Shown here: in pieces, positions 2,674 to 41,815 of the stretch
Layout of the letters: the number at the start of each line of letters is the position of its first letter
Numbering within the stretch: position 1 is the first letter of the stretch
Assembly: GCF_022045235.1 (NCBI RefSeq)
Contig: NW_027266265.1
Span: forward strand, 14,136,001-14,200,000
DNA length: 64,000 bases
Source of the DNA: Haliotis cracherodii
Lineage: Eukaryota
Direction of reading: 5' to 3'
The notes under the pieces: generated by a model
Told to the model about the DNA's origin: nothing
Databases searched by the model: none
What the model saw: the letters and a program-made list of their open reading frames with translations, nothing else
Translations under genes and position numbers: made by a program

Positions 2674-3795
2674 ATGAAGATGTATCCACAAGAACGACTG
2701 AAGAGTAGGAAACTACTCTCCCCCATACTCGAGGCGAACGAGCGTCAGTCTAACCCTCGTAGTCCACGAACGCCAGAACTGCATCAAGATTTACTTGGTA
2801 GGAGATCCTGAATTTATGATACAAAACAAATTAAATGCAAGACATCATCACTTGATGTGTTTGTTTGAAGCAATTACAGTTACATTCCAAGTATGTCTTT
2901 ATATAACAGTGGAATCGAGTCGGGTGTTTGTACTTTTGTTTTTGTTTTCGTTTCCAGTTCAGTACATGGACCTGAAATCTCAAGTCGGAAATTTGGAGGA
3001 AAGGTAGGCACAGTCTCGTTTAATATTCATGAACGTTCGTCTAAAATATACAAAAGGAAAAACAAGAAATGTGCATCTCATTCAAATATCATAGATAAAA
3101 TGACTTTGAGAAACGATATCTTCTAAACTATCGACATATCTTTTTTCAGTCTTCTCGATCACCTTTTCAATGAGAACCAGAAGCTGAGAGAGGAGAACGA
3201 GCGACAGGCCCGACAACTTCGGGAGGACAACGCCTTAAGGCTGAAAGTTGAGTCGGAGAGGCAGGACTATAGGCTGGAGTATTTCAACTACCGTCTCAGT
3301 TACACAATGGCGCAGGCTGAGCTCCAGGAACTGAAACAGACGCTAGAGGGACTGGCGGGGGACTGGGAGAAGGAGAAGCGGACAGAGATGGAGCAGAGGA
3401 AGAAGCTGGAGGAAGAGCTGGCAGCTCTCCAGCACCAGACTGCCCCTCTGACCTGTCACACTCCTGGCAATAAGCGGACCTGTTCCTCCAGCGTCAGTCC
3501 TCCAGTTCAACCAAGGAAGGCTCGAAGACCTTACACAGGAAAGTCAAAGGACAAGGTTCCAAGCAGGATCTCACATGTGAAGACAGACTTCTCTGCTTCC
3601 GGTGACAACTTGGTGCAGGCCAAGGCCACAGATAAGAATGAAACCAAGTTGAAGGTCACTTCCAGTGTTAGATCCATTCTGAAAGACACCAAGACAGGAC
3701 AGGGTGCTGAAAGGAAACCAACCAGATCCTCCAGGAACCTTTCTGTTAGATTCACAAAGGAAATGCCAGTTGGAAAGATCCGTCGCGAAATGTAA
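2674..3795 (+). CDS. Array gene copy 1: 271-aa uncharacterised coiled-coil protein with LSPILE, SILK and LSVRF motifs; exons 2674-2797, 2958-3003, 3150-3795
   Basis: GT-AG introns with pyrimidine tracts (cccacag|ATG, G|gtagga, tttccag|TT, AG|gtaggc, ttttcag|T). Phases 1 and 2 join into one 816-nt frame: MKMYPQERLKSRKLLSPILE...VQYMDLKSQVGNLEESLLDHLFNENQKLREE...MAQAELQEL...KIRREM*. The structure is conserved in all 8 copies. Confidence 0.85.
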
Positions 3796-5149
3796 TTACG
3801 ACCCTCGCCACAAGTAACAAACTTTATAAACTGTTTAATTGTTGGTTCTTTAATTCATATTGATTTCACATTCTTGTAATTCCGTGTGTAAAATAATCGC
3901 TGACTATGTTGTGCATGTGTCAGTGTTTCTCTGTTAACATCTGGGTAATATATCACGTTACTGAAGAAACTGCTTTGTGTTTGTACTTACAACCTCATCA
4001 ATTATGTGGGAAGTCAATGATCACCTCTCAACTCTGACCAGGATGATGCATGTCCGTCATGCCCCAAAGTCGTGGGTCGATGCTCACACTTTTTACCACT
4101 GGTTTGCCTGCTCCCGTGCAGACACTGTCATGCTACGCGTCACGATACTAAATCCGTACGTCACACGTGTTTCGCATTCGTGACTAACTGTCACGCTTCG
4201 CGGGAATAGATCACGATAGATGAAAGTTGATGAAGAAAACAAATACTTTCATATTTATCTTTAGGTTTATATCGAACACTGAAGCTAAAAGGTCATATAT
4301 ATTTCTTCTCACGGAGTAATTAGCTACAGGACGCAATTCGTTACATGTTCAATGAGTGAGTATACACCCTGACACAAGGTAGACAACTCTGTTCCCCTTA
4401 TTTCGTGGAGGGACATGAAATGTTGGAAACATGATTTAGTTCCCCAAATTTCTTCTTTCTTTTCCTTCAAAATAGCATGACATTCCCTCGGATTAACATT
4501 TGTTCGTTGGGAACATGGAAGCAGGTTGTTTTCTACATAAATCGAAAATAATAGATGAGATATTATACACTGTGTCGTAATAACTATATTAATGGTCATG
4601 AAATCATTTTGAAATGGATTAATAAGTCCCTATTTAGTTACTGACATGGGTCTATAGAGTGAAGAATACCGAGTTCGTCATTGACCCTTTGAACCTTCAC
4701 CCGCCTTTGTGACCGATGTTTGTTAACCAGTTTTTATACATGCGCATATGGCATGCATATCTACGTTATAGATATCTTTGCAAATGTAGCGTATAAACGT
4801 AAATTTACAAAGATATGCCCAGTGCAGCTATATCTCAAGACAAGCGAGTGTGCCGCCACTCTGTCTGACGTGATGTGCCACTGTACTGTGCCTCCAATCT
4901 GTATAAATATAGTGTGCCCCCACCTGTCTACAGTAATTGTGCCACCACTCTGTCTGAGGGAATGTGCCACTGTACTGTGCCTCCAATCTGTTTAAATATA
5001 GTGTGCCCCACCTGTCTATAGTAATTGTGCCCCCAGTTTGTCTGACGTAATGTGCACAAGTCCAGTTTTTCTATATGACCATTTTGCAGGAATATTTACG
5101 CTTCGCATATCGGTTCAAATGCAGGGTAAAAACGTATTTTTTCATTTAT

Positions 5150-6475
5150 CTCCAGTCTGTCTGACATAAGCGTGTCCCCAGTCTGTCTGACATGAGCGTG
5201 TCCCCAGTTTGTCTGACATAAGCGTGTCCCCAGTCTGTCTGACATAAGCGTGTCCCCAGTCTGTCTGACATATGTGTGTCCCCAGTCTGTCTGACATAAA
5301 TGTGTCCCCAGTCTGTCTGGCATGAGTGTGTCTCCAGTCTGTCTGCCATATGTGTGTCCCCAGTCTGTCTGTCATAAGTGTGTCCCCAGTCTGTCTGTCA
5401 TGAGTGTGTCCCTAGTGTTTTTGACATACGTGTGTCCCCCGTCTGTCTGACATACGTGTGTCCCCCGTCTGTCTGACATACGTGTGTCCCCCGTCTGTCT
5501 GTCATAAGTGTGTCCCCAGTCTGTCTGTCATACGTGTGTCTCCAGTCTGTCTGTCATACGTGTGTCTCCAGTCTGTCTGTCATAAGTGTGTCTCCAGTCT
5601 GTCTGACATACGTGTGTCCCCCGTCTGTCTGACATACGTGTGTCCCCAGTCTGTCTGTCATAAGTGTGTCCCCCGTCTGTCTGACATACGTGTGTCCCCC
5701 GTCTGTCTGACATACGTGTGTCCCCAGTCTGTCTGTCATAAGTGTGTCCCCAGTCTGTCTGTCATACGTGTGTCTCCAGTCTGTCTATCATAAGTGTGTC
5801 CCCCGTCTGTCTGACATACGTGTGTCCCCCGTCTGTCTGACATACGTGTGTCCCCAGTCTGTCTGTCATAAGTGTGTCCCCAGTCTGTCTGTCATACGTG
5901 TGTCTCCAGTCTGTCTATCATAAGTGTGTCCCCAGTCTGTCTGACATTAGTGTGTCTCCAGTCTGTCTATCATAAGTGTGTCCCTAGTCTGTCTGATATA
6001 AGTGTGTCCCCAGTCTGTCTGTCATACGTGTGTCCCCAGTCTGTCTGTCATACGTGTGTCCCCAGTCTGTCTGTCATAAGTGTGTCCCCAGTCTGTCCGA
6101 CATAAGTGTGTCCCCAGTCTGTCTGACATAAGTGTGTCCCAATCTGTCTGAGAGACGTGTGTCCTCAAGCTGTCTGTAATAAGTGTGTTCCCAGTCTTTC
6201 TGTCATGAGCGTGTCCCCAGTTCCATCATAAGTTTGTCCCCAGTCTCTGACATAAATGTGTCCTCAGTCTGTCTGACATAAATGTGTCCCCAGTCTGTCT
6301 GACATAAGTGTGTCCCCATTTTGTCTGACTTAAGTGTGTCCCCAGTCTGTCCGACTTAAGTATGTCCCCAGTCTGTCTGACAGAAATGTGTCCCATGTTT
6401 GTCTGACATGTGTTTCCCCAGTCTATCTGACATAAGTGTGTCCCCAGTCTGTCTGACATAAGTGTGTTCCCAGTT
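5150..6475. repeat. 26-bp minisatellite block before unit 2
   Basis: Same monomer. Confidence 0.95.
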
Positions 6476-7107: not shown

Positions 7108-7780
7108 TTTTCCAAGTGTTTTATTCACTTGTGATCTTACTGTTTAACCTCGAGTTTCAAACTGTGAAATATACTATTATGAAATATCGACGCGTGTTAG
7201 GTGTGAGTGAAGCGCTTGGTTTTCTTAATGTAAAGTAATCATGGAATTAAAGATGCACCCTGACGTCTTTTACAGCTTTGACAGGAGACTTAATCTGTGC
7301 GTCTTCAACACGCATAATTTGTTATGTGTCGTGAAGAGACGGAGCCCCGCTTACATAAAGCCGTATCGTGCATGGTGAACACTGTCAGTGACGTCATAGA
7401 CAGAAACAGTGGAAATGACGTCACAGAATGGTTCCATGACGACGTTGATGGTTCCCAATCAGTCGCCGACACAACTTGGTGGTGTTCAGACGTACATCTA
7501 TTGCTCCTGCAAAACTTCACATTTGTTGCTGATCTGTGTCTACTTGCACAAGTCTACACCTCATCTCAGTATTAGGTAAGCAATGTCAGTTTAACTCCTA
7601 CAGTTGGTTTACTTTTACTGATAGCGTTTGTTTTCTAACCCTCGTTCACATCTATATTTCACGGCTCTGAAATTTGTTATCGGTAAATTACCTTTGTATT
7701 AAATGACACTCCGTCTCCAATGTAATTACGGAACTCAAATAATTCCTAAATTCAAATGTGATTATTTTTTTGTCCCACAG

Positions 7781-8903
7781 ATGAAGATGTATCCACAAGA
7801 ACGACTGAAGAGTAGGAAACTACTCTCCCCCATACTCGAGGCGAACGAGCGTCAGTCTAGCCCTCGTAGTCCAAGAACACCAGAACTGCATCAAGATTTA
7901 CTTGGTAGGAGATCCTGAATTTATGATACAAAACAAATTAAATGCAAGACATCATCACTTGATGTGTTTGTTTGAAGCAATTACAGTTACATTCCAAGTA
8001 TGTCTTTATATAACAGTGGAATCGAGTCGGGTGTTTGTACTTTTGTTTTTGTTTTCGTTTCCAGTTCAGTACATGGACCTGAAATCTCAAGTCGGAGATT
8101 TGGAGGAAAGGTAGGCACAGTCTCGTTTAATATTCATGAACGTTCGTCTAAAATATACAAAAAGGAAAAACAAGAAATGTGCATCTCATTCAAATATCAT
8201 AGATAAAATTACTTTGAGAAACGATATCTTCTAAACTATCGACATATCTTTTTTCAGTCTTCTCGATCACCTTTTCAATGAAAATCAGAAGCTGAGAGAG
8301 GAGAACGAGCGACAGGCCCGACAACTCCGGGAGGACAACGCCTTAAGGCTGAAAGTTGAGTCGGAGAGACAGGACTATAGGCTGGAGTATTACAACTATC
8401 GTCTCAGTTACACAATGGCGCAGGCTGAGCTCCAGGAACTGAAGCAGACGCTAGAGGCACTGGCGGGGGACTGGGAGAAGGAGAAACAGACAGAGATGGA
8501 GCAGAGGAAGAAGCTGGAGGAAGAGCTGGCAGCTCTCCAGCGCCAGACTGCCCCTCTGACCTGTCACACTCCTACCAATAAGCGGACCAGTTCCTCCAGC
8601 GTCAGTCCTCCAGTTCAACCAAGGAAGGCTCGAAGACCTTACACAGGAAAGTCAAAGGACAAGGTTCCAAGCAAGATCTCACATGTCAAAACAGACTTCT
8701 CTGCTTCCGGTGACAATTTGGTGAAGGCCAAGGCCACAGATATAAATGAAACCAAGTTGAAGGTCACTCCTGGTGTAAGATCCATTCTGAAAGACACCAA
8801 GAGGGGACAGGATGCTGAAAAGAAGCCAACCCGGTCCTCCAGGAACCTTTCTGTTAGATTCACAAAGGAAATGCCAGTTGGGAAGATCCGTCACGAAATG
8901 TAA
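7781..8903 (+). CDS. Array gene copy 2 (exons 7781-7904, 8065-8110, 8258-8903)
   Basis: Same splice sites and exon sizes (124/46/646 nt) as copy 1; open frame. Confidence 0.85.
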
Positions 8904-9541
8904 TTACGACCCTCCCCACAAGGAACAAACTTTATAAACTGTTTAATTGTTGGTTCTTTAATTCATATTGATTTCACACTCTTGTAATTCCGTGTGTAAA
9001 ATAATCGCTGATTATCTTGTGCATGTGTCAGTGTTTCTCTGTTAACATCTGAGTAATATATCACGTTACTGAAGAAACTGCTTTGTGTTTGTATTTACAA
9101 CCTCATCAATTATGTGGGAAGTCAATGATCACCTCTTAACTCTGACCAGGATGATGCATGTCCGTCATGCCCCAAAGTCGTGGGTCGATGCTCACACTTT
9201 CTACCACTGGTTTGCCTGCTCCTGTGCACACACTGTCACGCTTCGCGAATAGATCACGATAGATCGGTATGGGGCGTTAAATTAGTTTGAAATTAACCTT
9301 AAATTTAATCTATGCATGGAGAAAATTGAATGTGTCTATATTCGCTATACAGAAATTTGTAAAAGAGATATGAAATGTCTTGTTGAAAGTTGATAAATAA
9401 ATCAAATACTTTCCTATTTGCCTTTAGGTTAATATCGAACCCTGATGCTAAATAGTCATATTTATTACCCACATGGTGAAGATACAGGACTACTTTTTTC
9501 ATTCATAAGATTTTGCGAGACGTCATTCATTTTGGGTTTAG

Positions 9542-9722
9542 TGAGTGAGTGAGTGAGTGAGTGAGTGAGTTTGAGTTTACGCCGCTTTTAGCAATGTTCC
9601 AGCAATATTACGGCGGGGGACACCAGAAATGGGCTTCACACATTGTACCCATGTTGGGATTCGAACCCGAGTCTTCGGCGTGACGAGCGAACGCTTTAAC
9701 CACTAGGCTACCCGACCGCCCC
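9542..9722 (-). mobile_element. SINE family A, independent insertion in the unit-2 spacer
   Basis: tRNA head and long (GAGT)n tail on +; imperfect TSD TTTTG(G/T)GTTTAG. Confidence 0.85.
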
Positions 9723-10562
9723 TTTTGTGTTTAGAATACAGTACCACAGCTTCTTGTGAAGACGATCGCTGCCGTATGTCACGTGTCTCAAAGACAAGCA
9801 ACTAGTTTTAAAGAACTCGCGACCTTCGTATTGTTAGCCCGATAGCGAACCGACTGAGCAACGTCCACAAGTGAAACTTGTGCAAATTTACCTTGTCATG
9901 AATACGCCGTTACGGAACTGAACGAACATTTTTAGATGCAAGATATGTAAAATCAAAAATTATTTCTGGGGGATTCTTTGACGAAGAACTTGAAATCATA
10001 CGCGCATTCTGATTGGTTTGTTGTATTTTCGCACATAACATTCATCGATAGAGTCTTCTTGGAGGTTACGGAAAGGGGCGAGTGGTGACGAATGTCGTGA
10101 CTGTAGTCTACGGACACCTACGAGTGATCCCGATGCCATTTGGCACACTCGTCCCATTCCGTAATCTACAAGATACTGAGTGGTGAGGAATGAGCCGATA
10201 TGGCGAGAACTCAAAACGGCTCTTGGCGTCAAACGTCAGACGTCGAACCTGCGGTTACGCATGAATGACATGGAATTTAATCAATCGTCGGGTGATTTTT
10301 GTGACAGAAAAGTGTGGTAGAGAATACTGTAAGGATAATGTGGATAATTGTTAGGAACGAGGGAGGCATAAGCATGGCTAGTGACGACACAAGGGTGAGT
10401 TCGCTTTTAAATCAGTACTTAATAAATGTAGCGTGTATACAGTTTCCAGTAGCCAAAATATTCGACAGAAAACCATTTCATCTTTTTTTCTCGACGTTTT
10501 TGTGTGAAGAATATTAGGAGCATCTATAGAATCAACAATAGCCACTAAACGGGTACCGGAGC

Positions 10563-11766
10563 ACCTTTAGAATACAGTACCACAACTTCTCGTGAGGACG
10601 ATCTCTGCCGAAAGTCACATGTCTCAAAGACAAGCAACTAGTTTTTGTGAGAATCCGTCGGACGCGAACCCGCGACCTTCCGATTGTTAGCCCGACAGTT
10701 TACCGTCTGAGCTACGTCCACAAGCAACCAGTTTTTGTGAGAATCCGTCGGACGCGAACCCGCGACCTTCGGATTGTTAGCTCGCCACTGAGCTGCGTCC
10801 CCACTGTGAAACAAAGTGCAAATTGACCTAGTCATGCCCATGACGTTACGGAACTGAACGAAAAGGGTCGAATAGGTGACGGACACTTACGAAGTTTACG
10901 GGTAGGCATGGTGTCTCGTGACTTTAGTCTACGGACACTTACGAATGATACCGATGCCATTTGGCACACTCGTCCCATTCCGTAATCTACAAGATACCTC
11001 GTGGTGATGAATGAGCCGATATGGCGCGAACTGAAAACGGCTCCAGGTGATTTTTGTGACAGAAAAGTGTTGTGGGGAACACTGTAAGGATGAACGAGGG
11101 AGGCACCCTGGCTTGTGTGAATGTTCCAGGACAGTTTCCAGTAGCCAAAATAGTCGACACAAAACCATTGCATCCTTTATACTCGACGTTTTTGTGTGAA
11201 GAATATAAGGAGCCTCTATAGAATCTATAACAGCCACTAAACGATTACCTAACCCTAATGTTTGTAAAGGGGATCCAAGGGCTAAGGATAGAGTTCGGGG
11301 TAACCTACCCTAACACTGGCGACATTTGGATGTGTTCAGCGATATCCCTTATAATCTGCATTCTTGTGCATAATAATGAAAATTAATGAACCGGAAAAAT
11401 AATATATGTATATTAGTTCCCATTTATAACCATTTTTAGCTGCTTGAATTACGAGAAATACGAAATAAAAAATATATAAAAAATAAAAGTGCTTTCGTAA
11501 ACTAGCGCTTGTTCTAAAATACGCCGCCGCAGGCTAAATATAGCAACATATATGTTTATATAGCATATAAACAAATATTCAAAACTCTCAACACCGCTGG
11601 GCGTATTCAATGACATTGCGTGTAGAGATGATAGATCACTGGGAGGAGCTTATGCACACTCATTGAACCCTGACGTCGCCGGTGTGACTGGCAACAAAAT
11701 ACTACAAATTACGTAATAGGGTATTGTCACGTGTTTGAAAAGTTTGTGGTACTGTATTCTAAAGGT
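10563..11766. mobile_element. Non-autonomous inverted-repeat-bounded element (MITE or Helentron-associated-like)
   Basis: Perfect 23-bp inverted repeat ACCTTTAGAATACAGTACCACAA at 10563-10585 and 11744-11766; no coding capacity; a diverged copy of its left ~0.7 kb sits at ~9730-10550. Confidence 0.6.
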
Positions 11767-13021
11767 AGGGTCCCCATGAGCGTGACGCACCCGACCACTT
11801 TCGCAACTTTCAATTTGATTAACGTAAAGGGATAAGCGTGGTGAAGTGAGTCGGTTTAAACAATCTGGGCAGATATTTAGACTTACTTGGGATGTTCCGG
11901 TTGTGCCATCAGTGTCCCCTTCGAAGCGTATTTAGTGGCACTGTTTCGGGAGTTGTTTGTTCACGACTGTACGACCAGATCACTCAAAGTGAACATTTCC
12001 CATACAAATCATTCGAAAACTCCACTGAAGTGTGCCTAAATATCTGATTATGTGGCCCAAAATATCCCAAATGTGAACAATAACATTCCCCATCTCCAGC
12101 GTAAAACGCAGTGAGTAGATCACGGTTGTCTTTTCTTATTCCGGTGGTGACCTTGCCCTTCGTTCGAAGCTGTCACTGACATGCAAGCAGACCCGAGTTT
12201 GTTGATTCTCACGTCTTCAGTTATAGGGTGGTACAGTTAACATGAATGTCTTTGGCGAACACTCTGATTTCCCTCTTCCAAAATGGTTCGGACATGATAT
12301 AAATTCAGCTGATCATTTTGAATGCACAGACGGGACCCCGGCAGTGCGAGTGACCGACCCTTGGTCCGATATTCAAAGCGCGGCGCTAATGTGACATTTC
12401 AAATTTTCTTATAAAGGTTTCCTGCGTACTAACGACATGACTCTTGAACCTTAAGTTGAAGAAATTCTTCCAAAAGGATCTTGAGTGTCGGTGCTGATTT
12501 GTTTGCAAATACAACTGCAGGCGCATGTTGTTAATGCGTATACATAGAAATGTCAACATTGCCCATATATTGGGCATATATCAATATTCATGCGCAACCA
12601 GATTTTGCAACCGGTTTCAGTTTATTCTGTCAATGAACGAAAGTTGTTATGTATTTACACTTAAATATATATTCAACGTGGATCAGATACCATAGAAAGT
12701 CCATTCGTTTCGTTAAAATGGTATCTAACGAGAATGAGTGTAGTATTCTCTATATATTTCTTCTTACCGAGTAATTAGCTCCAGGAAGCAATACGTTACA
12801 TGTTCAATGAGAAAGAATAAACCCTGACACAAGGTAGGTAACTCTGTACCTCTTGTGCCGGTCATGCGTGGCTCTATTTCGGGCACAATGCAAAGAAGGG
12901 ACATGAAATGTTGGAAACAGTATTTCGTTTCCCAAATTTCTTCTCCTTTTCCCCTCAAAATAGCATGATATTCTCTCGGACTAATACGTTGGTTTCTACA
13001 TAAATAGAAAATAATATATTA

Positions 13022-13150
13022 GTGTGACATGAGTGTGTCCCATGTCTGTCTGACATAAGTGTGTCCCCAGTCTGTCTGACATAAGTGTGTCCCCAGTCTG
13101 TCCGGTATAAGCGTATCTCAAGTCTGTCTGACATAAGTGTGTTCCCACTT
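13022..13150. repeat. 26-bp minisatellite, contracted to ~5 monomers (before unit 3)
   Basis: Same monomer. Confidence 0.9.
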
Positions 13151-13609: not shown

Positions 13610-13781
13610 TGTAAGTGAGTGAGTGAGAATGGTTTTACGCAGCTTTTAGCAATATTCCAGCAATATCACGGCGGGGGTCACCAGAAATGAGCTTCTCACA
13701 TTGTACCCATGTGGGGAACAGAACCCGGGCCTTCGGCGTGACGAGCGAACGCTTTAACCACCAGGCTACCCCACCGCCCCA
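13610..13781 (-). mobile_element. SINE family A (unit 3 copy)
   Basis: Same position and TSD. Confidence 0.85.
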
Positions 13782-14455: not shown

Positions 14456-15578
14456 ATGAAGATGTATCCACAAGAACGACTGAAGAGTAGGAAACTACTC
14501 TCCCCCATACTCGAGGCGAACGAGCGTCAGTCTAGCCCTCGTAGTCCAAGAACACCAGAACTGCATCAAGATTTACTTGGTAGGAGATCCTGAATTTATG
14601 ATACAAAACAAATTAAATGCAAGACATCATCACTTGATGTGTTTGTTTGAAGCAATTACAGTTACATTCCAAGTATGTCTTTATATAACAGTGGAATCGA
14701 GTCGGGTGTTTGTACTTTTGTTTTTGTTTTCGTTTCCAGTTCAGTACATGGACCTGAAATCTCAAGTCGGAGATTTGGAGGAAAGGTAGGCACAGTCTCG
14801 TTTAATATTCATGAACGTTCGTCTAAAATATACAAAAAGGAAAAACAAGAAATGTGCATCTCATTCAAATATCATAGATAAAATTACTTTGAGAAACGAT
14901 ATCTTCTAAACTATCGACATATCTTTTTTCAGTCTTCTCGATCACCTTTTCAATGAAAATCAGAAGCTGAGAGAGGAGAACGAGCGACAGGCCCGACAAC
15001 TCCGGGAGGACAACGCCTTAAGGCTGAAAGTTGAGTCGGAGAGACAGGACTATAGGCTGGAGTATTACAACTATCGTCTCAGTTACACAATGGCGCAGGC
15101 TGAGCTCCAGGAACTGAAGCAGACGCTAGAGGCACTGGCGGGGGACTGGGAGAAGGAGAAACAGACAGAGATGGAGCAGAGGAAGAAGCTGGAGGAAGAG
15201 CTGGCAGCTCTCCAGCGCCAGACTGCCCCTCTGACCTGTCACACTCCTACCAATAAGCGGACCAGTTCCTCCAGCGTCAGTCCTCCAGTTCAACCAAGGA
15301 AGGCTCGAAGACCTTACACAGGAAAGTCAAAGGACAAGGTTCCAAGCAAGATCTCACATGTCAAAACAGACTTCTCTGCTTCCGGTGACAATTTGGTGAA
15401 GGCCAAGGCCACAGATATAAATGAAACCAAGTTGAAGGTCACTCCTGGTGTAAGATCCATTCTGAAAGACACCAAGAGGGGACAGGATGCTGAAAAGAAG
15501 CCAACCCGGTCCTCCAGGAACCTTTCTGTTAGATTCACAAAGGAAATGCCAGTTGGGAAGATCCGTCACGAAATGTAA
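14456..15578 (+). CDS. Array gene copy 3 (exons 14456-14579, 14740-14785, 14933-15578)
   Basis: Coding region appears identical to copy 2 at a 6675-bp offset. Confidence 0.85.
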
Positions 15579-21283: not shown

Positions 21284-22580
21284 ATGAAGATGTATCCACA
21301 AGAACGACTGAAGAGTCGGAAACTACTCTCCCCCATACTCGAGGCGGACGAGCGTCACTCTGACCCACGAAGTTCAAGAACGCCAGAACTGCATCAAGAT
21401 TTACTTGGTAGGAGATCCTGAATTTAAATACAAAACAAATTAAATGCAAGATATCATTACTTGATGTGTTTGTTTGAAGAAAATACAGTTACATTCCGAG
21501 TATGTTTTAGTCTTTATATAACAGTAGAATCGAGTCGGGTGTTTGTACTTTTGTTTTTGTTTTCGTTTCCAGTTCAGTACATGGACCTGAAATCTCAAGT
21601 CGGAGATTTGGAGGAAAGGTAGGCACAGTCTCGTTTAATATTCATGAACGTCCGTTTGGTGTGATAAGTCATAGAAATGAACATTTTAGTTTAATCTAGA
21701 ACCGACACAATCTTATTCTCTGTCAGTCATGAGACTTAATCGTAGCACATCTACCGTTACATTGTAGACCACGTGATGCCCATCCCTGATGCACACTGCC
21801 ATGCAGGTGCAATGTGTCTAATGTTGGCGTACAACATACAAAATAGAAAAATAAGAAATGTACACCTCATTTAAATATTGACAAAATGACTTTGAGAAAC
21901 GATATCTTCTAAACTATCGACATGTCTTTTTCAGTCTTCTCGATCACCTTTTCAATGAGAACCAGAAGCTGAGAGAGGAGAACGAGCGACAGGCTCGACA
22001 ACTGCGGGAGGAGAACGCCTTAAGGCTGAAAGTTGAGTCGGAGAGACAGGACTATAGGCTGGAGTATTACAACTATCGTCTCAGTTACACAATGGCGCAG
22101 GCTGAGCTCCAGGAACTGAAGCAGACGCTAGAGGGACTGGCGGGGGACTGGGAGAAGGAGAAGCAGACAGAGATGGACCAGAAGAAGAAGCTGGAGGCAG
22201 ATCTGGTAGCTCTCCAGCGCCAGACTGCCCCTCTGACCTGTCACACTCCTGCCAATAAGCGGACCAGTTCCTCCAGCGTCAGTCCTCCAGTTCAACCAAG
22301 GAAGGCTCGAAGACCTTACACAGGAAAGTCAAAGGACAAAGTTCCAAGCAGGATCTCACATGTGAAGACAGACTTCTCTGCTTCCGGTGACAACTTGGTG
22401 AAGGCCAAGGCCACATATAAGAATGAAAGCAAGTTGAAGGTCACTTCCAGTGTTAGATCCATTCTGAAAGACACAAAGAGAGGACAGGATGCTGAAAAGA
22501 AGCCAACCCGATCCTCCAGGAACCTTTCTGTTAGATTCACAAAGGAAATGCCAGTTGGAAAGATCCGTCACGAAATGTAA
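21284..22580 (+). CDS. Array gene copy 4, most divergent, with longer introns (exons 21284-21407, 21573-21618, 21935-22580)
   Basis: Same exon sizes and splice sites; open frame; last intron 316 nt vs 146 nt in copy 1. Confidence 0.85.
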
Positions 22581-25572: not shown

Positions 25573-26696
25573 ATGAAGATGTATCCACAAGAACGACTGA
25601 AGAGTAGGAAACTACTCTCCCCCATACTCGAGGCGAACGAGCGTCAGTCTAACCCTCGTAGTCCAAGAACGCAAGAACTGCATCAAGATTTACTTGGTAG
25701 GAGATCCTGAATTTATGATACAAAACAAATTAAATGCAAGACATCATCACTTGATGTGTTTGTTTGAAGCAATTACAGTTACATTCCAAGTATTTCTTTA
25801 TATTACAGTTGAATCGAGTCGGGTGTTTGTACTTTTGTTTTTGTTTTCGTTTCCAGTTCAGTATATGGACCTGAAATCTCAAGTCGGAGATTTGGAGGAA
25901 AGGTAGGCACAGTCTCGTTTAATATTCATGAACGTTCGTCTAAAATATACAAAAAGGAAAAACAAGAAATACTGCATCTCATTCAAATATCATAGATAAA
26001 ATGACTTTGAGAAACGATATTTTCTAAACTATCGACATATCTTTTTTCAGTCTTCTCGATCACCTTTTCAATGAGAATCAGAAGCTGAGAGAGGAGAACG
26101 AGCGACAGGCCCGACAACTCCGGGAGGAGAACGCCTTAAGGCTGAAAGTTGAGGCGGAGAGGCAGGACTATAGGCTGGAGTATTACAACTATCGTCTCAG
26201 TTACACAATGGCACAGGCCGAGCTCCAGGAACTGAAGCAGACGCTAGAGGGACTGGCGGGCGACTGGGAGAAGGAGAAGCAGACAGAGATGGAGCAGAGG
26301 AAGAAGCTGGAGGAAGAGCTGACAGCTCTCCAGCGCCAGACTGCCCCTCTGACCTGTCATACTCCTGCCAATAAGCGGACCAGTTCCTCCAGCGTCGGTC
26401 CTCCAATTCAACCAAGGAAGGCTCGAAGACCTTACACAGGAAAGTCAAAGGACAAAGTTCAAAGCAAGATCTCACATGTCAAGACATACTTGTCTGCTTC
26501 CGGTGACAGCTTGGTGAAGGCCAAGGCCACAGATAAGAATGAAAGCAAGTTGAAGGTCACTTCCAGTGTAAGATCCATTCTGAAAGACAGCGAGAGAGGA
26601 CAGGTTGCTGAAAAAAACCCAACGCGATCTTCAAGGAACCTTTCTGTGAGATTCACAAAGGAAATGCCAGTTGGAAAGACCCGTCACGAAATGTAA
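25573..26696 (+). CDS. Array gene copy 5 (exons 25573-25696, 25857-25902, 26051-26696)
   Basis: Same exon structure; open frame. Confidence 0.85.
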
Positions 26697-30868: not shown

Positions 30869-31989
30869 ATGAAGATGTATCCACAAGAACGACTGAAGAG
30901 TAGGAAACTACTCTCCCCCATACTCGAGGCGAACGAGCGTCAGTCTAGCCCTCGTAGTCCAAGAACGCCAGAACTGCATCAAGATTTACTTGGTAGGAGA
31001 TCCTGAATTTATGATACAAAACAAATTAAATGCAAGACATCATCACTTGATGTGTTTGTTTGAAGCAATTACAGTTACATTCCAAGTATGTCTTTATATA
31101 ACAGTGGAATCGAGTCGGGTGTTTGTACTTTTGTTTTTGTTTTCGTTTCCAGTTCAGTATATGGACCTGAAATCTCAAGTCGGAGATTTGGAGGAAAGGT
31201 AGGCACAGTCTCGTTTAATATTCATGAACGTTCGTCTAAAATATACAAAAAGGAAAAACAAGAAATACTGCATCTCATTCAAATATAGATAAAATGACTT
31301 TGAGAAACGATATCTTCTAAACTATCGACATATCTTTTTTCAGTCTTCTCGATCACCTTTTCAATGAGAATCAGAAGCTGAGAGAGGAGAACGAGCGACA
31401 GGCCCGACAACTCCGGGAGGAGAACGCCTTAAGGCTGAAAGTTGAGGCGGAGAGGCAGGACTATAGGCTGGAGTATTACAACTATCGTCTCAGTTACACA
31501 ATGGCACAGGCCGAGCTCCAGGAACTGAAGCAGACGCTAGAGGGACTGGCGGGCGACTGGGAGAAGGAGAAGCAGACAGAGATGGAGCAGAGGAAGAAGC
31601 TGGAGGAAGAGCTGGCAGCTCTCCAGCGCCAGACTGCCCCTCTGACCTGTCATACTCCTGCCAATAAGCGGACCAGTTCCTCCAGCGTCAGTCCTCCAAT
31701 TCAACCAAGGAAGGCTCGAAGACCTTACACAGGAAAGTCAAAGGACAAAGTTCAAAGCAAGATCTCACATGTCAAGACATACTTGTCTGCTTCCGGTGAC
31801 AGCTTGGTGAAGGCCAAGGCCACAGATAAGAATGAAAGCAAGTTGAAGGTCACTTCCAGTGTAAGATCCATTCTGAAAGACAGCAAGAGAGGACAGGTTG
31901 CTGAAAAAAACCCAACGCGATCTTCAAGGAACCTTTCTGTGAGATTCACAAAGGAAATGCCAGTTGGAAAGACCCGTCACGAAATGTAA
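30869..31989 (+). CDS. Array gene copy 6 (exons 30869-30992, 31153-31198, 31344-31989)
   Basis: Same exon structure; open frame. Confidence 0.85.
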
Positions 31990-33426: not shown

Positions 33427-34502
33427 CGCCCCCCAGTCTTTCTGCCATAAGTGTGTCCCCAGTCCGTCTGCCATAAGTGAGTCCCAAGTCTGTCTGACAT
33501 AAATGTGTCCCCAGTCTGTCTGACATAAGCGTGTCCCCAGTCTGTCTGACAAACGTGTGTCCCCAGTCTGTCCGACTTAAGTGTGTCCCCAGTCTGTCTG
33601 ACATAAGTCTGTCCCCAGTCTGTCTGACATACGTGTGTTCCCAGTCTGTCTGACACAAGTGTGTCTCCAGTCTGTCTGACTTAAGTGTGTCTCCAATCTG
33701 TCTGACACAAGTGTGTCTCCAGTCTGTCTGACATAAGTGTGTACCCAGTCCGTCTGCCATAAGTGAGTCCCAAGTCTGTCTGACATAAATGTGTCCCCAC
33801 TCTGTCTGACATAAGCGTGTCCCCAGTCTGTCTGACATAAGTCTCTCCCCAGTCTGTCTGACATACGTGTGTCCCCGGTCAATCCGACATAAGTGTGTCT
33901 CCAGTCTGTCCGGCATAAGCGTGTCCCCAGTCTGTCTAACATAAGTGTGTCCTCAGTCTGTCTGTCATAAGTGGGTCTCCCGTCTGTCCAACATAAGTGT
34001 ATCCACAGTCTGTCTGACAAACGTGTGTCCCCAGTCTGTCCGACTTAAGTGTGTTCCCAGTCTGTCTGACAAACGTGTGTCCCCAGTCTGTCTGACTTAA
34101 GTGTGTCTCCAATCTGTCTGACACAAGTGTGTCTCCAGTCTGTCTGACATAAGTGTGTTCCCAGTCTGTATGACATAAGTGTGCCCACAGTCTGTCTGAC
34201 ATACGTGTGTCCCCAGTTAATCCGACATAAGTGTGTCTCCAGTCTGTCCGGCATAAGCGTGTCTCCAGTCTGTCCGACTTAAGTGTTTCCCCAGTCTGTC
34301 TGACATCCGTGTGTCTCCAGTCTGTCCGACTTAAGTGTGTCCCCAGTCTGTCTGACATAAGTGTGTCCCCAGTCTGTCTGACATAAGTGTGTCCCCATCT
34401 GTCTGACATAAGTGTGTCCCCAGTTTGTCTGACATAAGCGTGTCACCAGTCTGTCTGACATAAGTGTGTCCCCAGTCTATCTTACATAAGTGTGTCCCCA
34501 GT
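33427..34502. repeat. 26-bp minisatellite block before unit 7
   Basis: Same monomer. Confidence 0.95.
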
Positions 34503-35795: not shown

Positions 35796-36919
35796 ATGAA
35801 GATGTATCCACAAGAACGACTGAAGAGTAGGAAACTACTCTCCCCCATACTCGAGGCGAACGAGCGTCAGTCTAGCCCTCGTAGTCCAAGAACGCCAGAA
35901 CTGCATCAAGATTTACTTGGTAGGAGATCCTGAATTTATGATACAAAACAAATTAAATGCAAGACATCATCACTTGATGTGTTTGTTTGAAGCAATTACA
36001 GTTACATTCCAAGTATGTCTTTATATAACAGTGGAATCGAGTCGGGTGTTTGTACTTTTGTTTTTGTTTTCGTTTCCAGTTCAGTATATGGACCTGAAAT
36101 CTCAAGTCGGAGATTTGGAGGAAAGGTAGGCACAGTCTCGTTTAATATTCATGAACGTTCGTCTAAAATATACAAAAAGGAAAAACAAGAAATACTGCAT
36201 CTCATTCAAATATCATAGATAAAATGACTTTGAGAAACGATATCTTCTAAACTATCGACATATCTTTTTTCAGTCTTCTCGATCACCTTTTCAATGAGAA
36301 TCAGAAGCTGAGAGAGGAGAACGAGCGACAGGCCAGACAACTCCGGGAGGAGAACGCCTTAAGGCTGAAAGTTGAGGCGGAGAGGCAGGACTATAGGCTG
36401 GAGTATTACAACTATCGTCTCAGTTACACAATGGCACAGGCCGAGCTCCAGGAACTGAAGCAGACGCTAGAGGGACTGGCGGGCGACTGGGAGAAGGAGA
36501 AGCAGACAGAGATGGAGCAGAGGAAGAAGCTGGAGGAAGAGCTGGCAGCTCTCCAGCGCCAGACTGCCCCTCTGACCTGTCATACTCCTACCAATAAGCG
36601 GACCAGTTCCTCCAGCGTCGGTCCTCCAATTCAACCAAGGAAGGCTCGAAGACCTTACACAGGAAAGTCAAAGGACAAAGTTCAAAGCAAGATCTCACAT
36701 GTCAAGACATACTTGTCTGCTTCCGGTGACAGCTTGGTGAAGGCCAAGGCCACAGATAAGAATGAAAGCAAGTTGAAGGTCACTTCCAGTGTAAGATCCA
36801 TTCTGAAAGACAGCAAGAGAGGACAGGTTGCTGAAAAAAACCCAACGCGATCTTCAAGGAACCTTTCTGTGAGATTCACAAAGGAAATGCCAGTTGGAAA
36901 GACCCGTCACGAAATGTAA
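35796..36919 (+). CDS. Array gene copy 7 (exons 35796-35919, 36080-36125, 36274-36919)
   Basis: Same exon structure; open frame. Confidence 0.85.
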
Positions 36920-38356: not shown

Positions 38357-39381
38357 CGCCCCCCAGTCTTTCTGCCATAAGTGTGTCCCCAGTCCGTCTG
38401 CCATAAGTGAGTCCCAAGTCTGTCTGACATAAATGTGTCCCCAGTCTGTCTGACATAAGCGTGTCCCCAGTCTGTCTGACAAACGTGTGTCCCCAGTCTG
38501 TCCGACTTAAGTGTGTCCCCAGTCTGTCTGACATAAGTCTGTCCCCAGTCTGTCTGACTTAAGTGTGTCTCCAATCTGTCTGACACAAGTGTGTCTCCAG
38601 TCTGTCTGACATAAGTGTGTACCCAGTCCGTCTGCCATAAGTGAGTCCCAAGTCTGTCTGACATAAATGTGTCCCCACTCTGTCTGACATAAGCGTGTCC
38701 CCAGTCTGTTTGACATAAGTCTCTCCCCAGTCTGTCTGACATACATGTGTCCCCGGTCAATCCGACATAAGTGTGTCTCCAGTCTGTCCGGCATAAGCGT
38801 GTCCCCAGTCTGTCTAACATAAGTGTGTCCTCAGTCTGTCTGTCATAAGTGGGTCTCCCGTCTGTCCAACATAAGTGTATCCACAGTCTGTCTGACAAAC
38901 GTGTGTCCCCAGTCTGTCCGACTTAAGTGTGTTCCCAGTCTGTCTGACAAACGTGTGTCCCCAGTCTGTCTGACTTAAGTGTGTCTCCAATCTGTCTGAC
39001 ACAAGTGTGTCTCCAGTCTGTCTGACATAAGTGTGTTCCCAGTCTGTATGACATAAGTGTGCCCACAGTCTGTCTGACATACGTGTGTCCCCAGTTAATC
39101 CGACATAAGTGTGTCTCCAGTCTGTCCGGCATAAGCGTGTCTCCAGTCTGTCCGACTTAAGTGTTTCCCCAGTCTGTCTGACATCCGTGTGTCTCCAGTC
39201 TGTCCGACTTAAGTGTGTCCCCAGTCTGTCTGACATAAGTGTGTCCCCAGTCTGTCTGACATAAGTGTGTCCCCATCTGTCTGACATAAGTGTGTCCCCA
39301 GTTTGTCTGACATAAGCGTGTCACCAGTCTGTCTGACATAAGTGTGTCCCCAGTCTATCTTACATAAGTGTGTCCCCAGTT
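38357..39381. repeat. 26-bp minisatellite block before unit 8
   Basis: Same monomer. Confidence 0.95.
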
Positions 39382-39846: not shown

Positions 39847-40018
39847 CGTAAGTGAGTGAGTGAGTATGGTTTTACGCAGCTTTTAGCAATATTCCAGCAA
39901 TATCACGGCGGGGGACACCAGAAATGAGCTTCACACATTGTACCCATGTCTGGAATCGAACCCGGGTCTTCGGCGTGACGAGTGAACGCTTTAACCACCA
40001 GGCTACCCCGCCGTCCCA
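39847..40018 (-). mobile_element. SINE family A (unit 8 copy)
   Basis: Same position and TSD. Confidence 0.85.
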
Positions 40019-40691
40019 TTTTCCAAGTGTTTTATTCACTTGTGATCTTAACTGTTCCACCTCGAGTTTCAAACTGTGAAATATACTATTATGAAATATC
40101 GACGCGTGTTAGGTGTGAGTGAAGCGCTTGGTTTTGCTAATGTTAAGTAATCATGGAATTAAAGATGCACCCTGACGTCTTTTACAGCTTTGACAGGAGA
40201 CTTAATCTGTGCGTCTTCAACACGCATAATTTGTTATGTGTCGTGAAGAGACGGAGCCCAGCTTACATAAAGCCGTATCGTGCATGGTGAACACTGCCAG
40301 TGACGTCATAGACAGAAACAGTGGAAATGACGTCACAGAATGGTTCCATGACGACGTTGATGGTTCCCACTCAGTCGCCGACACAACTTGGTGGTGTTCA
40401 GACGTACATCTGTTGCTACTGCAAAACTTCACATTTGTTGCTGATCTGTATCTACTTGCACAAGTCTACACCTCATCTCAGTATTAGGTAAGCAATGCCA
40501 GTCTAACTCCTACAGTTGGTTTACTTTTACTGATAGCGTTTGTTTCCTAACCCTCGTTCACATCTATATTTCACGGCTCTGAAATTCTTTATCGATAAAT
40601 TACCTTTGTATTAAATGACACTCCGTCTCCATTGTAATTACGGAACTCAAATAATTCCTAAATTCAAATGTGATTATGTTTTGTCCCACAG

Positions 40692-41815
40692 ATGAAGATG
40701 TATCCACAAGAACGACTGAAGAGTAGGAAACTACTCTCCCCCATACTCGAGGCGAACGAGCGTCAGTCTAGCCCTCGTAGTCCAAGAACGCCAGAACTGC
40801 ATCAAGATTTACTTGGTAGGAGATCCTGAATTTATGATACAAAACAAATTAAATGCAAGACATCATCACTTGATGTGTTTGTTTGAAGCAATTACAGTTA
40901 CATTCCAAGTATGTCTTTATATAACAGTGGAATCGAGTCGGGTGTTTGTACTTTTGTTTTTGTTTTCGTTTCCAGTTCAGTATATGGACCTGAAATCTCA
41001 AGTCGGAGATTTGGAGGAAAGGTAGGCACAGTCTCGTTTAATATTCATGAACGTTCGTCTAAAATATACAAAAAGGGAAAACAAGAAATACTGCATCTCA
41101 TTCAAATATCATAGATAAAATGACTTTGAGAAACGATATCTTCTAAACTATCGACATATCTTTTTTCAGTCTTCTCGATCACCTTTTCAATGAGAATCAG
41201 AAGCTGAGAGAGGAGAACGAGCGACAGGCCCGACAACTCCGGGAGGAGAACGCCTTAAGGCTGAAAGTTGAGGCGGAGAGGCAGGACTATAGGCTGGAGT
41301 ATTACAACTATCGTCTCAGTTACACAATGGCACAGGCCGAGCTCCAGGAACTGAAGCAGACGCTAGAGGGACTGGCGGGCGACTGGGAGAAGGAGAAGCA
41401 GACAGAGGTAGAGCAGAGGAAGAAGCTGGAGGAAGAGCTGGCAGCTCTCCAGCGCCAGACTGCCCCTCTGACCTGTCATACTCCTGCCAATAAGCGGACC
41501 AGTTCCTCCAGCGTCGGTCCTCCAATTCAACCAAGGAAGGCTCGAAGACCTTACACAGGAAAGTCAAAGGACAAAGTTCAAAGCAAGATCTCACATGTCA
41601 AGACATACTTGTCTGCTTCCGGTGACAGCTTGGTGAAGGCCAAGGCCACAGATAAGAATGAAAGCAAGTTGAAGGTCACTTCCAGTGTAAGATCCATTCT
41701 GAAAGACAGCAAGAGAGGACAGGTTGCTGAAAAAAACCCAACGCGATCTTCAAGGAACCTTTCTGTGAGATTCACAAAGGAAATGCCAGTTGGAAAGACC
41801 CGTCACGAAATGTAA
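40692..41815 (+). CDS. Array gene copy 8 (exons 40692-40815, 40976-41021, 41170-41815)
   Basis: Same exon structure; open frame. Confidence 0.85.

What the first reader, a model, noticed from the sequence alone, without database searches (positions are those of the whole stretch)
2674..41815. Amplified orphan gene encoding a candidate dual PP2A-B56 / PP1 phosphatase scaffold
Seen: the spliced 271-aa protein has LSPILE at aa 15-20 (copy 1: 2716-2733) followed by S/T-P sites (SPRTP in most copies), a ~110-aa coiled coil, a basic disordered tail, SILK at aa 232-235 (3673-3684) and LSVRF 18 aa later (3739-3753). All three motifs are invariant in the 8 copies, although neighbouring residues vary. 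Established: LSPIxE is the canonical PP2A-B56 LxxIxE docking motif, enhanced by CDK phosphorylation as in RepoMan/CDCA2. SILK upstream of an RVxF (extended consensus [KRL][KRSTAMVHNQ][VI]x[FW]) is the PP1-docking pair of KNL1 and RIF1. RKLL overlapping LSPILE also fits an RxxL D-box. Inference: a lineage-specific, copy-number-amplified cell-division or germline regulator that recruits or titrates both mitotic phosphatases. I cannot assign it to a known family.
Basis: partly seen in the sequence, partly recalled or inferred. Interest (0 to 1): 0.85.

Follow-up and report, generated by a model that had tools for sequence, protein, structure and literature searches.

The report
Abalone-only amplified phosphatase-docking coiled-coil gene
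Black abalone carries about 40 copies of a gene found only in abalone, whose paired-helix protein keeps a near-perfect docking site for the cell-division phosphatase PP2A-B56. Its second proposed docking site, for PP1, is confined to one branch of the family and is much less certain.

Summary
The window is black abalone (Haliotis cracherodii), contig C2. It holds 8 intact tandem copies of a 271-aa gene with three coding exons.

- **Family size:** this array has 16 copies, a second array 2 Mb away has 7, and about 18 more distant paralogs lie elsewhere.
- **Expression:** spliced RNA contigs from four runs confirm both coding junctions and add a 5'UTR exon.
- **Range:** the family was found only in Haliotis. 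It has no Pfam or PDB relatives.
- **Shape:** a disordered N-terminus, one roughly 120-aa helix that models as a parallel in-register dimer, and a disordered basic tail.
- **B56 site:** LSP[IV]xE is the only conserved island of the N-terminus in every subfamily checked, down to about 25% identity, with synonymous codon turnover. In the most distant branch it reads LSPIPELPE, as in RepoMan. Abalone B56 keeps the binding-pocket exons. B56 docking is therefore well supported by sequence, but binding was not tested.
- **PP1 sites:** SILK and LSVRF occur only in the amplified C2 clade. LSVRF fails the canonical RVxF pattern, and SILK reads SIVK or SIMK in other species. The block is under purifying selection, but PP1 docking remains only a candidate.

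Two earlier scan notes (s1-826477, s1-829654) may describe paralogs elsewhere in this genome; I did not verify this.

The parts
2217..2469 (+). 5'UTR exon of copy 1. The 3' end at 2469 is mapped; the 5' end is not mapped and 2217 is only the start of the 83-aa upstream ORF, by homology with copy 2 (7324-7575). The intron is 2470-2673.
   Evidence: Loose ends of RNA contigs in 4 runs read the letters of 2440-2468 directly before 2672-2674. Donor GT lies at 2470 and acceptor AG at 2672-2673. The upstream ORF was listed.
2674..3795 (+). Copy 1 coding region, 271 aa plus stop: exon 1 at 2674-2797, exon 2 at 2958-3003, exon 3 at 3150-3795.
   Evidence: Spliced contigs carry joints 2797/2958 and 3003/3150, both GT..AG.
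2716..2733 (+). LSPILE (aa 15-20), a candidate PP2A-B56 docking motif of the LxxIxE type. A basic cluster RLKSRK lies just upstream and acidic residues sit at motif positions 8-9.
   Evidence: The consensus is taken from PMC10970375.
2773..3441 (+). Coding DNA for the long helix (aa 34-154), interrupted by the two introns. It is predicted to form a parallel in-register homodimeric coiled coil.
   Evidence: AlphaFold2 pLDDT 92-98. ESMFold2 homodimer score 0.44 against a best control of 0.00.
3523..3543 (+). RRPYTGK (aa 182-188), the most conserved element of the disordered tail across the family. Its function is unknown.
   Evidence: R183, P184, Y185 and T186 are invariant in A1 and nearly so in A2. 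It is also present in P0039-P0044.
3673..3684 (+). SILK (aa 232-235), a candidate secondary PP1 docking motif found only in the C2 clade.
   Evidence: The SILK definition is from PMC9813921.
3739..3753 (+). LSVRF (aa 254-258), a degenerate RVxF-like candidate PP1 motif inside the conserved block PTRSSRNLSVRFTKEMPVGK.
7781..8903 (+). Copy 2 coding region (exons 7781-7904, 8065-8110, 8258-8903).
14456..15578 (+). Copy 3 coding region (exons 14456-14579, 14740-14785, 14933-15578). Its CDS is identical to copy 2.
21284..22580 (+). Copy 4 coding region (exons 21284-21407, 21573-21618, 21935-22580). Its introns are longer.
25573..26696 (+). Copy 5 coding region (exons 25573-25696, 25857-25902, 26051-26696).
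30869..31989 (+). Copy 6 coding region (exons 30869-30992, 31153-31198, 31344-31989).
35796..36919 (+). Copy 7 coding region (exons 35796-35919, 36080-36125, 36274-36919).
40692..41815 (+). Copy 8 coding region (exons 40692-40815, 40976-41021, 41170-41815). This is the last copy of the 16-copy array.
5152..6474 (.). One of the 26-bp minisatellite arrays that separate the gene copies. The others are at 1-1361, 13025-13147, 19700-19822, 23941-24255, 28092-29557, 33431-34502, 38361-39380 and 43011-46697. Their variable length accounts for part of the unit-length variation (4.4-6.7 kb).

Best explanation
This is a real, expressed multigene family restricted to Haliotis. Black abalone has about 40 loci, 23 of them in the C2 clade, and 8 of those lie in this window. 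The family evolves by tandem duplication. Each gene encodes a small protein with three regions: a disordered N-terminus, a roughly 120-residue helix that pairs into a parallel in-register dimer, and a disordered basic tail.

The N-terminus carries a high-affinity-type LxxIxE motif of the form [RK]-rich, then L-S-P-[IV]-x-E, then acidic residues. I infer that it docks the conserved pocket of the B56 regulatory subunit, probably more tightly once Ser16 is phosphorylated by a proline-directed kinase. On this reading the dimer presents two docking sites. It would either bring PP2A-B56 to whatever the coiled coil and tail bind, with the protein itself as one substrate, or compete with other LxxIxE clients for B56.

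The heavily amplified C2 clade has also acquired a constrained C-terminal block that contains SILK and a degenerate RVxF (LSVRF). This block may add PP1 docking.

Shown here: gene structure, splicing, copy number, taxonomic range, purifying selection, motif conservation, the helix, and conservation of the B56 pocket. Modelled only: the dimer. Inferred: binding to B56, binding to PP1, and any cellular role.
For: Gene and family:
- Eight intact copies with GT..AG introns. There are 16 plus 7 copies in two arrays, of which 21 are intact.
- Pairwise dN/dS between copy groups is 0.2-0.5.
- Spliced contigs in 4 runs from 4 coded organisms. RefSeq models of 271 aa exist in H. cracherodii and H. rufescens.

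Structure:
- A single helix at aa 34-154 with pLDDT above 90, and disordered ends.
- Homodimer score 0.44 against a best control of 0.00. That mark was reached by 21 of 30 microbial proteins solved as pairs of one chain and by 0 of 23 solved as single chains (on eukaryotes 17 of 29, and 0 of 30). The three runs agree in at least 95% of contacts, and the partner pLDDT is 83. Contacts are i-to-i, meaning parallel and in register.

Motif:
- S16, P17 and E20 are invariant in A1, and L15 and I18 are kept in at least 90% of sequences.
- The motif is kept in the 25-30%-identical subfamilies as QVLSPIPES or QVLSPVLEF.
- It reads LSPIPELPE in P0043 and P0044. That is the RepoMan peptide PLLSPIPELPE crystallised on B56gamma (PMC7108865).
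- Codons for L, S, P and I vary synonymously among paralogs.
- The conserved positions are exactly P1, P2, P4 and P6 of [LMFI]xx[ILV]xE, P5 varies, and P8-P9 are acidic (PMC10970375).
- A basic cluster N-terminal to the motif resembles the B56 basic-patch enhancer (PMC7108865).
- The strict motif appears in 2.5e-4 of shuffles.

Partner:
- There are two B56 genes in the genome.
- Their exons for HEAT repeats 3-4 are nearly identical to human B56gamma, including H187. H187A is the LxxIxE pocket mutant (PMC6398977).

PP1 block:
- V256 and F258 are invariant in the clade across 4 species.
- dS is 0.27-0.41 with dN/dS about 0.2 over aa 229-258, and only synonymous changes occur in PTRSSRNLSVRF.
Against: - No binding was tested or modelled. 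A model with B56 or PP1 could not be run because those partners were available here only as separate exons.
- Predictions of short docking motifs have high false-positive rates, and a Ser-Pro site can serve other readers.
- The basic cluster sits 2-7 residues from the motif. The published basic patches lie 5-24 residues upstream of the motif, within about 15 on the paper's own description.
- The family does not exist outside Haliotis, so there is no deep conservation to lean on.
- For PP1: LSVRF fails the canonical RVxF pattern. Position 1 reads I or M in H. rubra and one H. asinina copy. SILK reads SIVK or SIMK there. Both motifs are absent from all other subfamilies.
- Tissue and stage of expression are unknown.
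Confidence: 0.55

Rival explanations
1. Full dual scaffold. The C2-clade protein binds PP2A-B56 at its N-terminus and PP1 at its C-terminus through SILK plus LSVRF, and gene amplification sets the dose of a hub for both mitotic phosphatases.
For: All three motifs are present and invariant in 21 intact copies. The SILK-to-RVxF order and the 18-aa spacer resemble KNL1 and inhibitor-2 (my own knowledge). The pair occurs in 2e-4 of shuffles. The block is under strong purifying selection. The clade that carries the pair is the most amplified one.
Against: LSVRF lacks the basic residue next to V and fails the canonical pattern. The L varies to I or M, and SILK to SIVK or SIMK, in other species. The constrained block is longer than the motifs (PTRSSRNLSVRFTKEMPVGK), so it may be read by something else. 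The motifs are absent from every other subfamily.
Confidence: 0.22
2. The conserved N-terminal island is not a B56 site. It could be a proline-directed phospho-switch read by another module: an APC/C D-box (R..L..I), a cyclin RxL site, or an EB1 SxIP site in the LSPIPE branches. On this reading the family is a structural or regulatory coiled-coil protein unrelated to phosphatases.
For: RKLLSPI fits R..L..[LIVM], and K10, R12 and K13 are also conserved. SPIP in P0009, P0021, P0039 and P0043 fits [ST]x[IL]P. The loose LxxIxE pattern occurs in 15% of shuffles.
Against: The R of the D-box or RxL is lost in the QVLSPIPE, RLSPVLE and QVLSPVLE branches, while L, S, P, I/V and E stay. The final P of SxIP is absent from most members, and the invariant E is not part of SxIP. 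The invariant positions coincide with the B56 determinants.
Confidence: 0.18
3. A divergent short shugoshin: an N-terminal coiled coil that binds PP2A-B56 directly, plus a C-terminal basic motif that binds chromatin.
For: Only a resemblance recalled from memory: a dimeric coiled coil plus a basic C-terminal block (RSSRNLSVRFTKEMPVGKIRR).
Against: No match to Shugoshin_N or Shugoshin_C in Pfam scans of 16 members at E up to 10. A genome-wide scan with PF07557 found no hit over the cut-off and none at these loci. The C-terminal block is absent from most of the family.
Confidence: 0.02
4. A non-functional segmental duplication, with decaying or unexpressed open frames or an assembly artefact.
For: Copies 2 and 3 are identical over the gene and at least 1.2 kb downstream. 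That could be a very recent duplication or an assembly duplication. Two of the 23 copies are broken.
Against: Twenty-one of 23 frames are intact, with dN/dS of 0.2-0.5. Spliced transcripts exist in four runs. Orthologous arrays exist in H. rufescens, and copies in H. rubra and H. asinina.
Confidence: 0.02

Closest known systems
RepoMan (CDCA2)
   Same: One polypeptide carries a phospho-enhanced LSPIxE B56 site and a PP1 RVxF site. The most distant branch of this family has LSPIPELPE, letter for letter as in the RepoMan peptide 588-598 quoted in PMC7108865. A basic cluster lies N-terminal to the motif.
   Different: There is no sequence homology. From my own knowledge, RepoMan is about 1000 aa, has no coiled coil, has a canonical RVTF and no SILK, and is single-copy and widespread in vertebrates. 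This protein is 271 aa, is predicted to dimerise, occurs only in Haliotis, is amplified, and has a non-canonical RVxF.
BubR1 KARD motif
   Same: KKLSPIIEDDRE in BubR1 (PMC7108865) compared with RKLLSPILEADER here. Both have L at P1, S-P at P2-P3, I at P4, E at P6, acidic residues downstream and basic residues upstream.
   Different: BubR1 is a large kinetochore checkpoint protein, and only the short motif is alike. No kinetochore-targeting region is recognisable here.
KNL1 N-terminus and inhibitor-2 (SILK followed by RVxF)
   Same: SILK lies N-terminal to an RVxF-type motif within a disordered basic region.
   Different: The RVxF here is LSVRF, without an adjacent basic residue. The spacer is 18 aa against about 28-30 (my own knowledge). 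The pair is clade-specific and SILK is not kept across species.
Shugoshin (SGO1, MEI-S332)
   Same: A dimeric coiled coil associated with PP2A-B56, and a basic C-terminus.
   Different: Shugoshin binds B56 through the coiled coil itself, not through LxxIxE. The Pfam Shugoshin_N and Shugoshin_C models do not match.
KIF4A, AIM1 and NHS (basic patch plus LxxIxE class)
   Same: A basic patch lies N-terminal to the LxxIxE motif (PMC7108865).
   Different: Here the patch lies 2-7 residues from the motif, closer than any published example (5-24 residues upstream, by the peptide numbering quoted in PMC7108865). Its contribution is untested.

Membership tests
LxxIxE-class PP2A-B56 docking motif | Sequence fits [LMFI]xx[ILV]xE, with the preferred L at P1, I at P4 and the invariant E at P6 | tested here: met
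   LSPILE in 16 copies, LSPVLE in cluster B, and LSPIPE, LSPVLE or LSPIVE in paralogs. The consensus is from PMC10970375.
LxxIxE-class PP2A-B56 docking motif | Affinity enhancers: a phosphorylatable or acidic P2, and acidic residues at P7-P9 | tested here: met
   S16-P17 is invariant. P8-P9 read N/D-E or E-D/E in most members.
LxxIxE-class PP2A-B56 docking motif | Lies in an accessible disordered region | tested here: met
   aa 1-33 are non-helical, with pLDDT about 48-50.
LxxIxE-class PP2A-B56 docking motif | Conserved among relatives beyond the background of the surrounding disorder | tested here: met
   It is the only invariant island before the helix in A1 and A2, and it shows synonymous codon turnover.
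LxxIxE-class PP2A-B56 docking motif | The host has B56 with an intact binding pocket | tested here: met
   There are two B56 genes. Their exons align to human B56gamma 163-210 and 226-286 with near identity, including H187 (PMC6398977).
LxxIxE-class PP2A-B56 docking motif | Motif-dependent physical binding to B56 | not testable with these tools
RVxF-class PP1 docking motif | Canonical pattern [RK]x{0,1}[VIL][^P][FW] | tested here: not met
   The pattern has no match in the tail.
   LSVRF fits. ISVRF in H. rubra and MSVRF in one H. asinina copy fail at position 1, while V and F are invariant in the clade.
RVxF-class PP1 docking motif | Conserved in relatives | tested here: inconclusive
   Conserved within the C2 clade across 4 species under purifying selection. 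Absent from all other subfamilies.
SILK-class PP1 motif | [GS]IL[RK], widened to G/S-I/V-L/V-K by the RRP1B structure | tested here: inconclusive
   SILK occurs in all H. cracherodii and H. rufescens copies. H. rubra and H. asinina have SIVK or SIMK. The definition is from PMC9813921.
Shugoshin | Match to the Pfam models Shugoshin_N (PF07558) or Shugoshin_C (PF07557) | tested here: not met
APC/C D-box degron | R..L..[LIVM], conserved among relatives | tested here: not met
   Present in the C2 clade and its close paralogs, but the R is lost in the QVLSPIPE, RLSPVLE and QVLSPVLE branches.

The most novel reading that the evidence does not exclude
The family is a copy-number-driven titrator or hub of the two main mitotic and meiotic phosphatases. 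A parallel dimer presents two BubR1- or RepoMan-grade B56 sites and, in the clade that gained a PP1-docking tail, also PP1. Its repeated tandem amplification in a broadcast-spawning mollusc would then reflect a dosage arms race, for example meiotic drive or its suppression, or germline conflict. That would make it a new kind of lineage-specific phosphatase regulator.
Probability: 0.1. Interest if true: 0.8.

Novelty: new member of a known kind. Interest (0 to 1): 0.5.

Why it matters
PP2A-B56 clients are usually single-copy, ancient and large. This is a young, genus-restricted protein with no detectable relatives that converged on the same optimal docking peptide as BubR1 and RepoMan. It was then amplified to dozens of copies, and one clade added a second constrained tail block. 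If binding is confirmed, it would be a natural bivalent B56 binder or competitor. It would also show how short docking motifs arise in new genes, and give a handle on phosphatase dosage control in molluscan cell division or gametogenesis. If binding fails, the family is still an uncharacterised, expressed, amplified abalone gene family with three conserved short motifs of unknown readers. One of these, RRPYTG[KR], is explained by no model so far.

Tried and rejected
- **Shugoshin idea (from my memory):** no Pfam match in 16 members, and none in a genome scan with PF07557. Rejected.
- **Pfam on exon peptides and on 16 full-length members:** only sub-threshold coiled-coil noise.
- **PDB profile search:** nothing below E = 1.
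- **ESM Atlas:** only generic unnamed coiled-coil clusters, best score 0.93 with 157 shared features, below the level that suggests kinship.
- **Range searches:** an exhaustive HMM search of 1.84 billion representatives and a wider profile search found Haliotis only.
- **Literature:** a search by LOC numbers found 0 papers. An abalone, tandem-duplication and coiled-coil search found nothing on this family.
- **Transposon or viral origin of the repeat unit:** the spacers hold no ORFs with content, only minisatellite frames, and intron positions are kept in dispersed paralogs. Rejected.
- **D-box, cyclin RxL or SxIP as the family-wide meaning of the N-terminal island:** the required residues are not conserved.
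- **Tissue of expression:** not obtainable, because run, sample and organism labels are coded.
- **Complex prediction with B56 or PP1:** not attempted, because only separate exons of those genes were available by reference.
- **Handling of the spliced model:** exons were joined only inside local scripts, for translation and dN/dS. Searches used exon references, and full-length work used the RefSeq protein P0001 and its relatives returned.

Full report
**1. What is in the window**

The stretch 2401-4000 recurs eight times on the + strand at 90-100% identity. Unit lengths are 4.4-6.7 kb. Each copy has three coding exons of 124, 46 and 646 nt with GT..AG introns and an open frame of 271 codons.

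The ATG is at 2674, LSPILE at 2716-2733, SILK at 3673-3684 and LSVRF at 3739-3753.

Between the copies lie arrays of a 26-bp minisatellite of very different lengths. The spacers hold no other credible gene.

**2. Organism and family size**

The contig lengths of this genome (C1 89,134,964; C2 59,495,813; C12 82,358,895) equal those recorded for Haliotis cracherodii RefSeq proteins. The window is therefore black abalone.

A six-frame search of the whole 1.18-Gb genome with the exon-3 peptide gave 47 exon-level matches:
- 16 copies in this array (C2: 14.089-14.178 Mb).
- 7 copies in a second array on the opposite strand at C2: 16.23-16.26 Mb.
- About 18 more distant loci on C1, C3, C7 (a cluster of 5), C11, C12, C45, C56 (clusters) and C78.

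Of the 23 C2 copies, 21 are intact. One has a premature TGA that removes the C-terminal block, and one has a frameshift.

**3. Expression and gene model**

Logan contigs of four runs, labelled as four different coded organisms, carry the joined form. The joints are 2797/2958 and 3003/3150, both GT..AG. One 1244-nt contig spans all three exons and the 3'UTR.

Loose ends in front of 2672 read the letters of 2440-2468. So there is a non-coding 5' exon that ends at 2469, followed by a 204-nt intron. The runs are only guessed to be RNA, but the spliced contigs themselves argue for it.

RefSeq has the same 271-aa models as 'uncharacterized protein', or with chance coiled-coil names.

The joined CDS was built only inside local scripts for translation and dN/dS. 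All searches used exon references or RefSeq protein ids.

**4. Selection**

Pairwise dN/dS between the copy groups is 0.2-0.5.

Divergence is a mosaic. Between copies 1 and 5, the introns and flanks differ by 1.4-2.7%. The helix-coding part of exon 3 differs by 4.4%, and the tail-coding part by 8.2%. Exon 3 therefore keeps older divergence, while the 5' part of the unit is homogenised, probably by gene conversion or unequal exchange.

Within the tail, aa 229-258 (SILK to LSVRF) have dS of 0.27-0.41 with dN/dS about 0.2. The codons of PTRSSRNLSVRF differ only synonymously, while replacements crowd just upstream.

In aa 155-228 some pairwise ratios exceed 1, but on 6-16 changes only, so nothing can be concluded.

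**5. Taxonomic range and relatives**

Three searches found only Haliotis proteins, from H. cracherodii, H. rufescens, H. rubra and H. asinina:
- A word-seeded search.
- An exhaustive HMM search of 1.84 billion cluster representatives.
- A second profile search that included the most divergent members.

No Pfam family, no PDB sequence and no named Atlas cluster matches. 'Orphan' is therefore fair at the genus level.

A tree of the C2 clade shows H. rufescens copies interleaved with H. cracherodii copies. There are also species-specific bursts: copies 5-8 plus one upstream copy, and the whole of cluster B. The H. rubra and H. asinina copies branch outside. Amplification therefore began before the H. 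cracherodii / H. rufescens split and is continuing.

**6. Structure**

AlphaFold2 with the family alignment gives one continuous helix at aa 34-154 (pLDDT 92-98). Residues 1-33 and 155-271 are unstructured.

Two copies of aa 30-160 were folded by ESMFold2:
- The score was 0.44 in three runs, against a best control of 0.00.
- That mark was reached by 21 of 30 microbial proteins solved as pairs of one chain and by 0 of 23 solved as single chains. On eukaryotes the counts were 17 of 29 and 0 of 30.
- The runs agree in at least 95% of contacts, and the partner pLDDT is 83.
- Contacts are residue i to residue i in an a/d pattern from 55 to 154, which means a parallel in-register dimer.

This supports dimerisation but does not prove it.

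**7. The N-terminal motif**

In the 16-sequence alignment, S16, P17 and E20 are invariant, and L15, I18, K10, R12 and K13 are kept in at least 90% of sequences.

The subfamilies that share only 22-30% identity still begin with QVLSPIPES, QVLSPVLEF or RLSPVLEE. This holds both in RefSeq models and in the first exons I located in this genome on C7, C56, C45 and C11. P0043 and P0044 read LSPIPELPE, identical to the RepoMan peptide crystallised on B56gamma (PMC7108865).

Codons vary synonymously across paralogs: CTC/CTG, TCC/TCT, CCC/CCT and ATA/ATT/ATC. The constraint is therefore on the peptide, not on the DNA.

The conserved positions are P1, P2, P4 and P6 of [LMFI]xx[ILV]xE. P5 is free (L, P, V or I), and P8-P9 are mostly acidic. 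These are the published affinity determinants (PMC10970375).

The alternatives fit less well:
- The R of the RxxL D-box or cyclin site is lost in three branches.
- The last P of an SxIP site is missing in most members.
- Neither alternative explains the invariant E.

The partner is present. The genome has two B56 genes. Their exons for HEAT repeats 3-4 are nearly identical to human B56gamma 163-210 and 226-286, including H187. H187A is the standard pocket mutant (PMC6398977).

I therefore rate B56 docking at about 0.6. It is an inference from sequence, not a demonstrated interaction.

**8. The PP1 pair**

SILK and LSVRF are present in all C2-clade copies that reach that far. One cluster-B copy has LSVSF.

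Across species, V256 and F258 are invariant, but the L is I in H. rubra and M in one H. asinina copy. SILK reads SIVK or SIMK there. SIVK fits the widened definition G/S-I/V-L/V-K proposed from the RRP1B structure (PMC9813921); SIMK does not.

It does not fit the canonical pattern, which needs a basic residue next to the V.

The other subfamilies have neither motif. The RVxF-like segment lies in a clade-specific insertion.

The constrained block is also longer than the two motifs. PP1 docking is a reasonable candidate for this clade, at about 0.3, but it is not a family property.

**9. An unexplained element**

The best-conserved part of the tail in the whole family is PP..P[KR]K..RPYTG[KR], at aa 174-188. 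It contains a basic cluster that looks like a nuclear localisation signal, and a Thr with Arg at -3 and -4. No motif class I know accounts for it. It could be the phospho-site on which a recruited phosphatase acts, but that is speculation.

**10. Verdict**

This is a real, expressed, abalone-restricted, tandemly amplified family of predicted dimeric coiled-coil proteins. Their defining short motif is a high-grade B56 docking site, and the amplified C2 clade carries an extra constrained tail block that may dock PP1.

The mechanism class, phosphatase docking through a short motif, is known. The family, its convergence on the BubR1 and RepoMan peptide, and its amplification are new.

Two earlier notes of this scan on other DNA of the same genome may describe paralogs. 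They are s1-826477 (an orphan with B56 motifs, SxIP and a coiled coil) and s1-829654 (a four-copy array of a three-exon coiled-coil gene). I could not confirm their identity.

Noticed in passing
window 1-1361, 5152-6474, 13025-13147, 19700-19822, 23941-24255, 28092-29557, 33431-34502, 38361-39380, 43011-46697: A 26-bp minisatellite (consensus TCCCCAGTCTGTCTGACATAAGTGTG) sits in every spacer between gene copies, with 5 to 137 repeats. It explains part of the unit-length variation and is a likely substrate for unequal exchange.
   Followed up: partly
window 9646-9717 (-) and 16321-16392 (-): A tRNA-like element lies at the Rfam threshold (29.3 against 29 bits) in the spacers of the two 6.7-kb units only. 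It is probably a tRNA-derived SINE carried along by the duplication.
   Followed up: no
window 7324-7575 (copy 2); homologous stretch about 2217-2469 in copy 1: The 5'UTR exon holds an 83-aa upstream ORF whose TAG stop is the last codon of the exon. In H. rufescens P0034 (339 aa) and in P0020 the stop is replaced and the frame runs into the main ORF. That gives an N-terminally extended isoform in other species.
   Followed up: partly
window 7508-20864 (copies 2 and 3): The two 6.68-kb units are identical over the gene, its introns and at least 1.2 kb downstream. They differ by 3.8% in the 600 bp upstream of the ATG. This is either a very recent duplication with a boundary there, or an assembly duplication.
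   Followed up: partly
window 3150-3795 against 2074-2673, 2798-2957, 3004-3149 and 3796-4395: The tail-coding DNA is 3-4 times more divergent between copy groups than the introns and flanks (8.2% against 1.4-2.7% for copies 1 and 5). So the 5' part of the unit is homogenised while exon 3 keeps old alleles.
   Followed up: yes
window 3523-3543 (aa 182-188) and homologous sites in all paralogs: RRPYTG[KR], preceded by PP..P[KR]K, is the most conserved tail element in the whole family and fits no motif class I know.
   Followed up: partly
window 50309-55993 (+), with a 36-bp minisatellite at 51062-53405: A neighbouring gene has ankyrin repeats and a SOCS-box-like C-terminal exon (ORF 55172-55993). 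I did not examine them.
   Followed up: no
L004 (G000:C2:14100585-14104226) and L031 (G000:C2:16246201-16248400): These are the two broken members of the C2 clade. One has a premature TGA that removes the RSSRNLSVRF block. The other has a frameshift after aa 174.
   Followed up: yes
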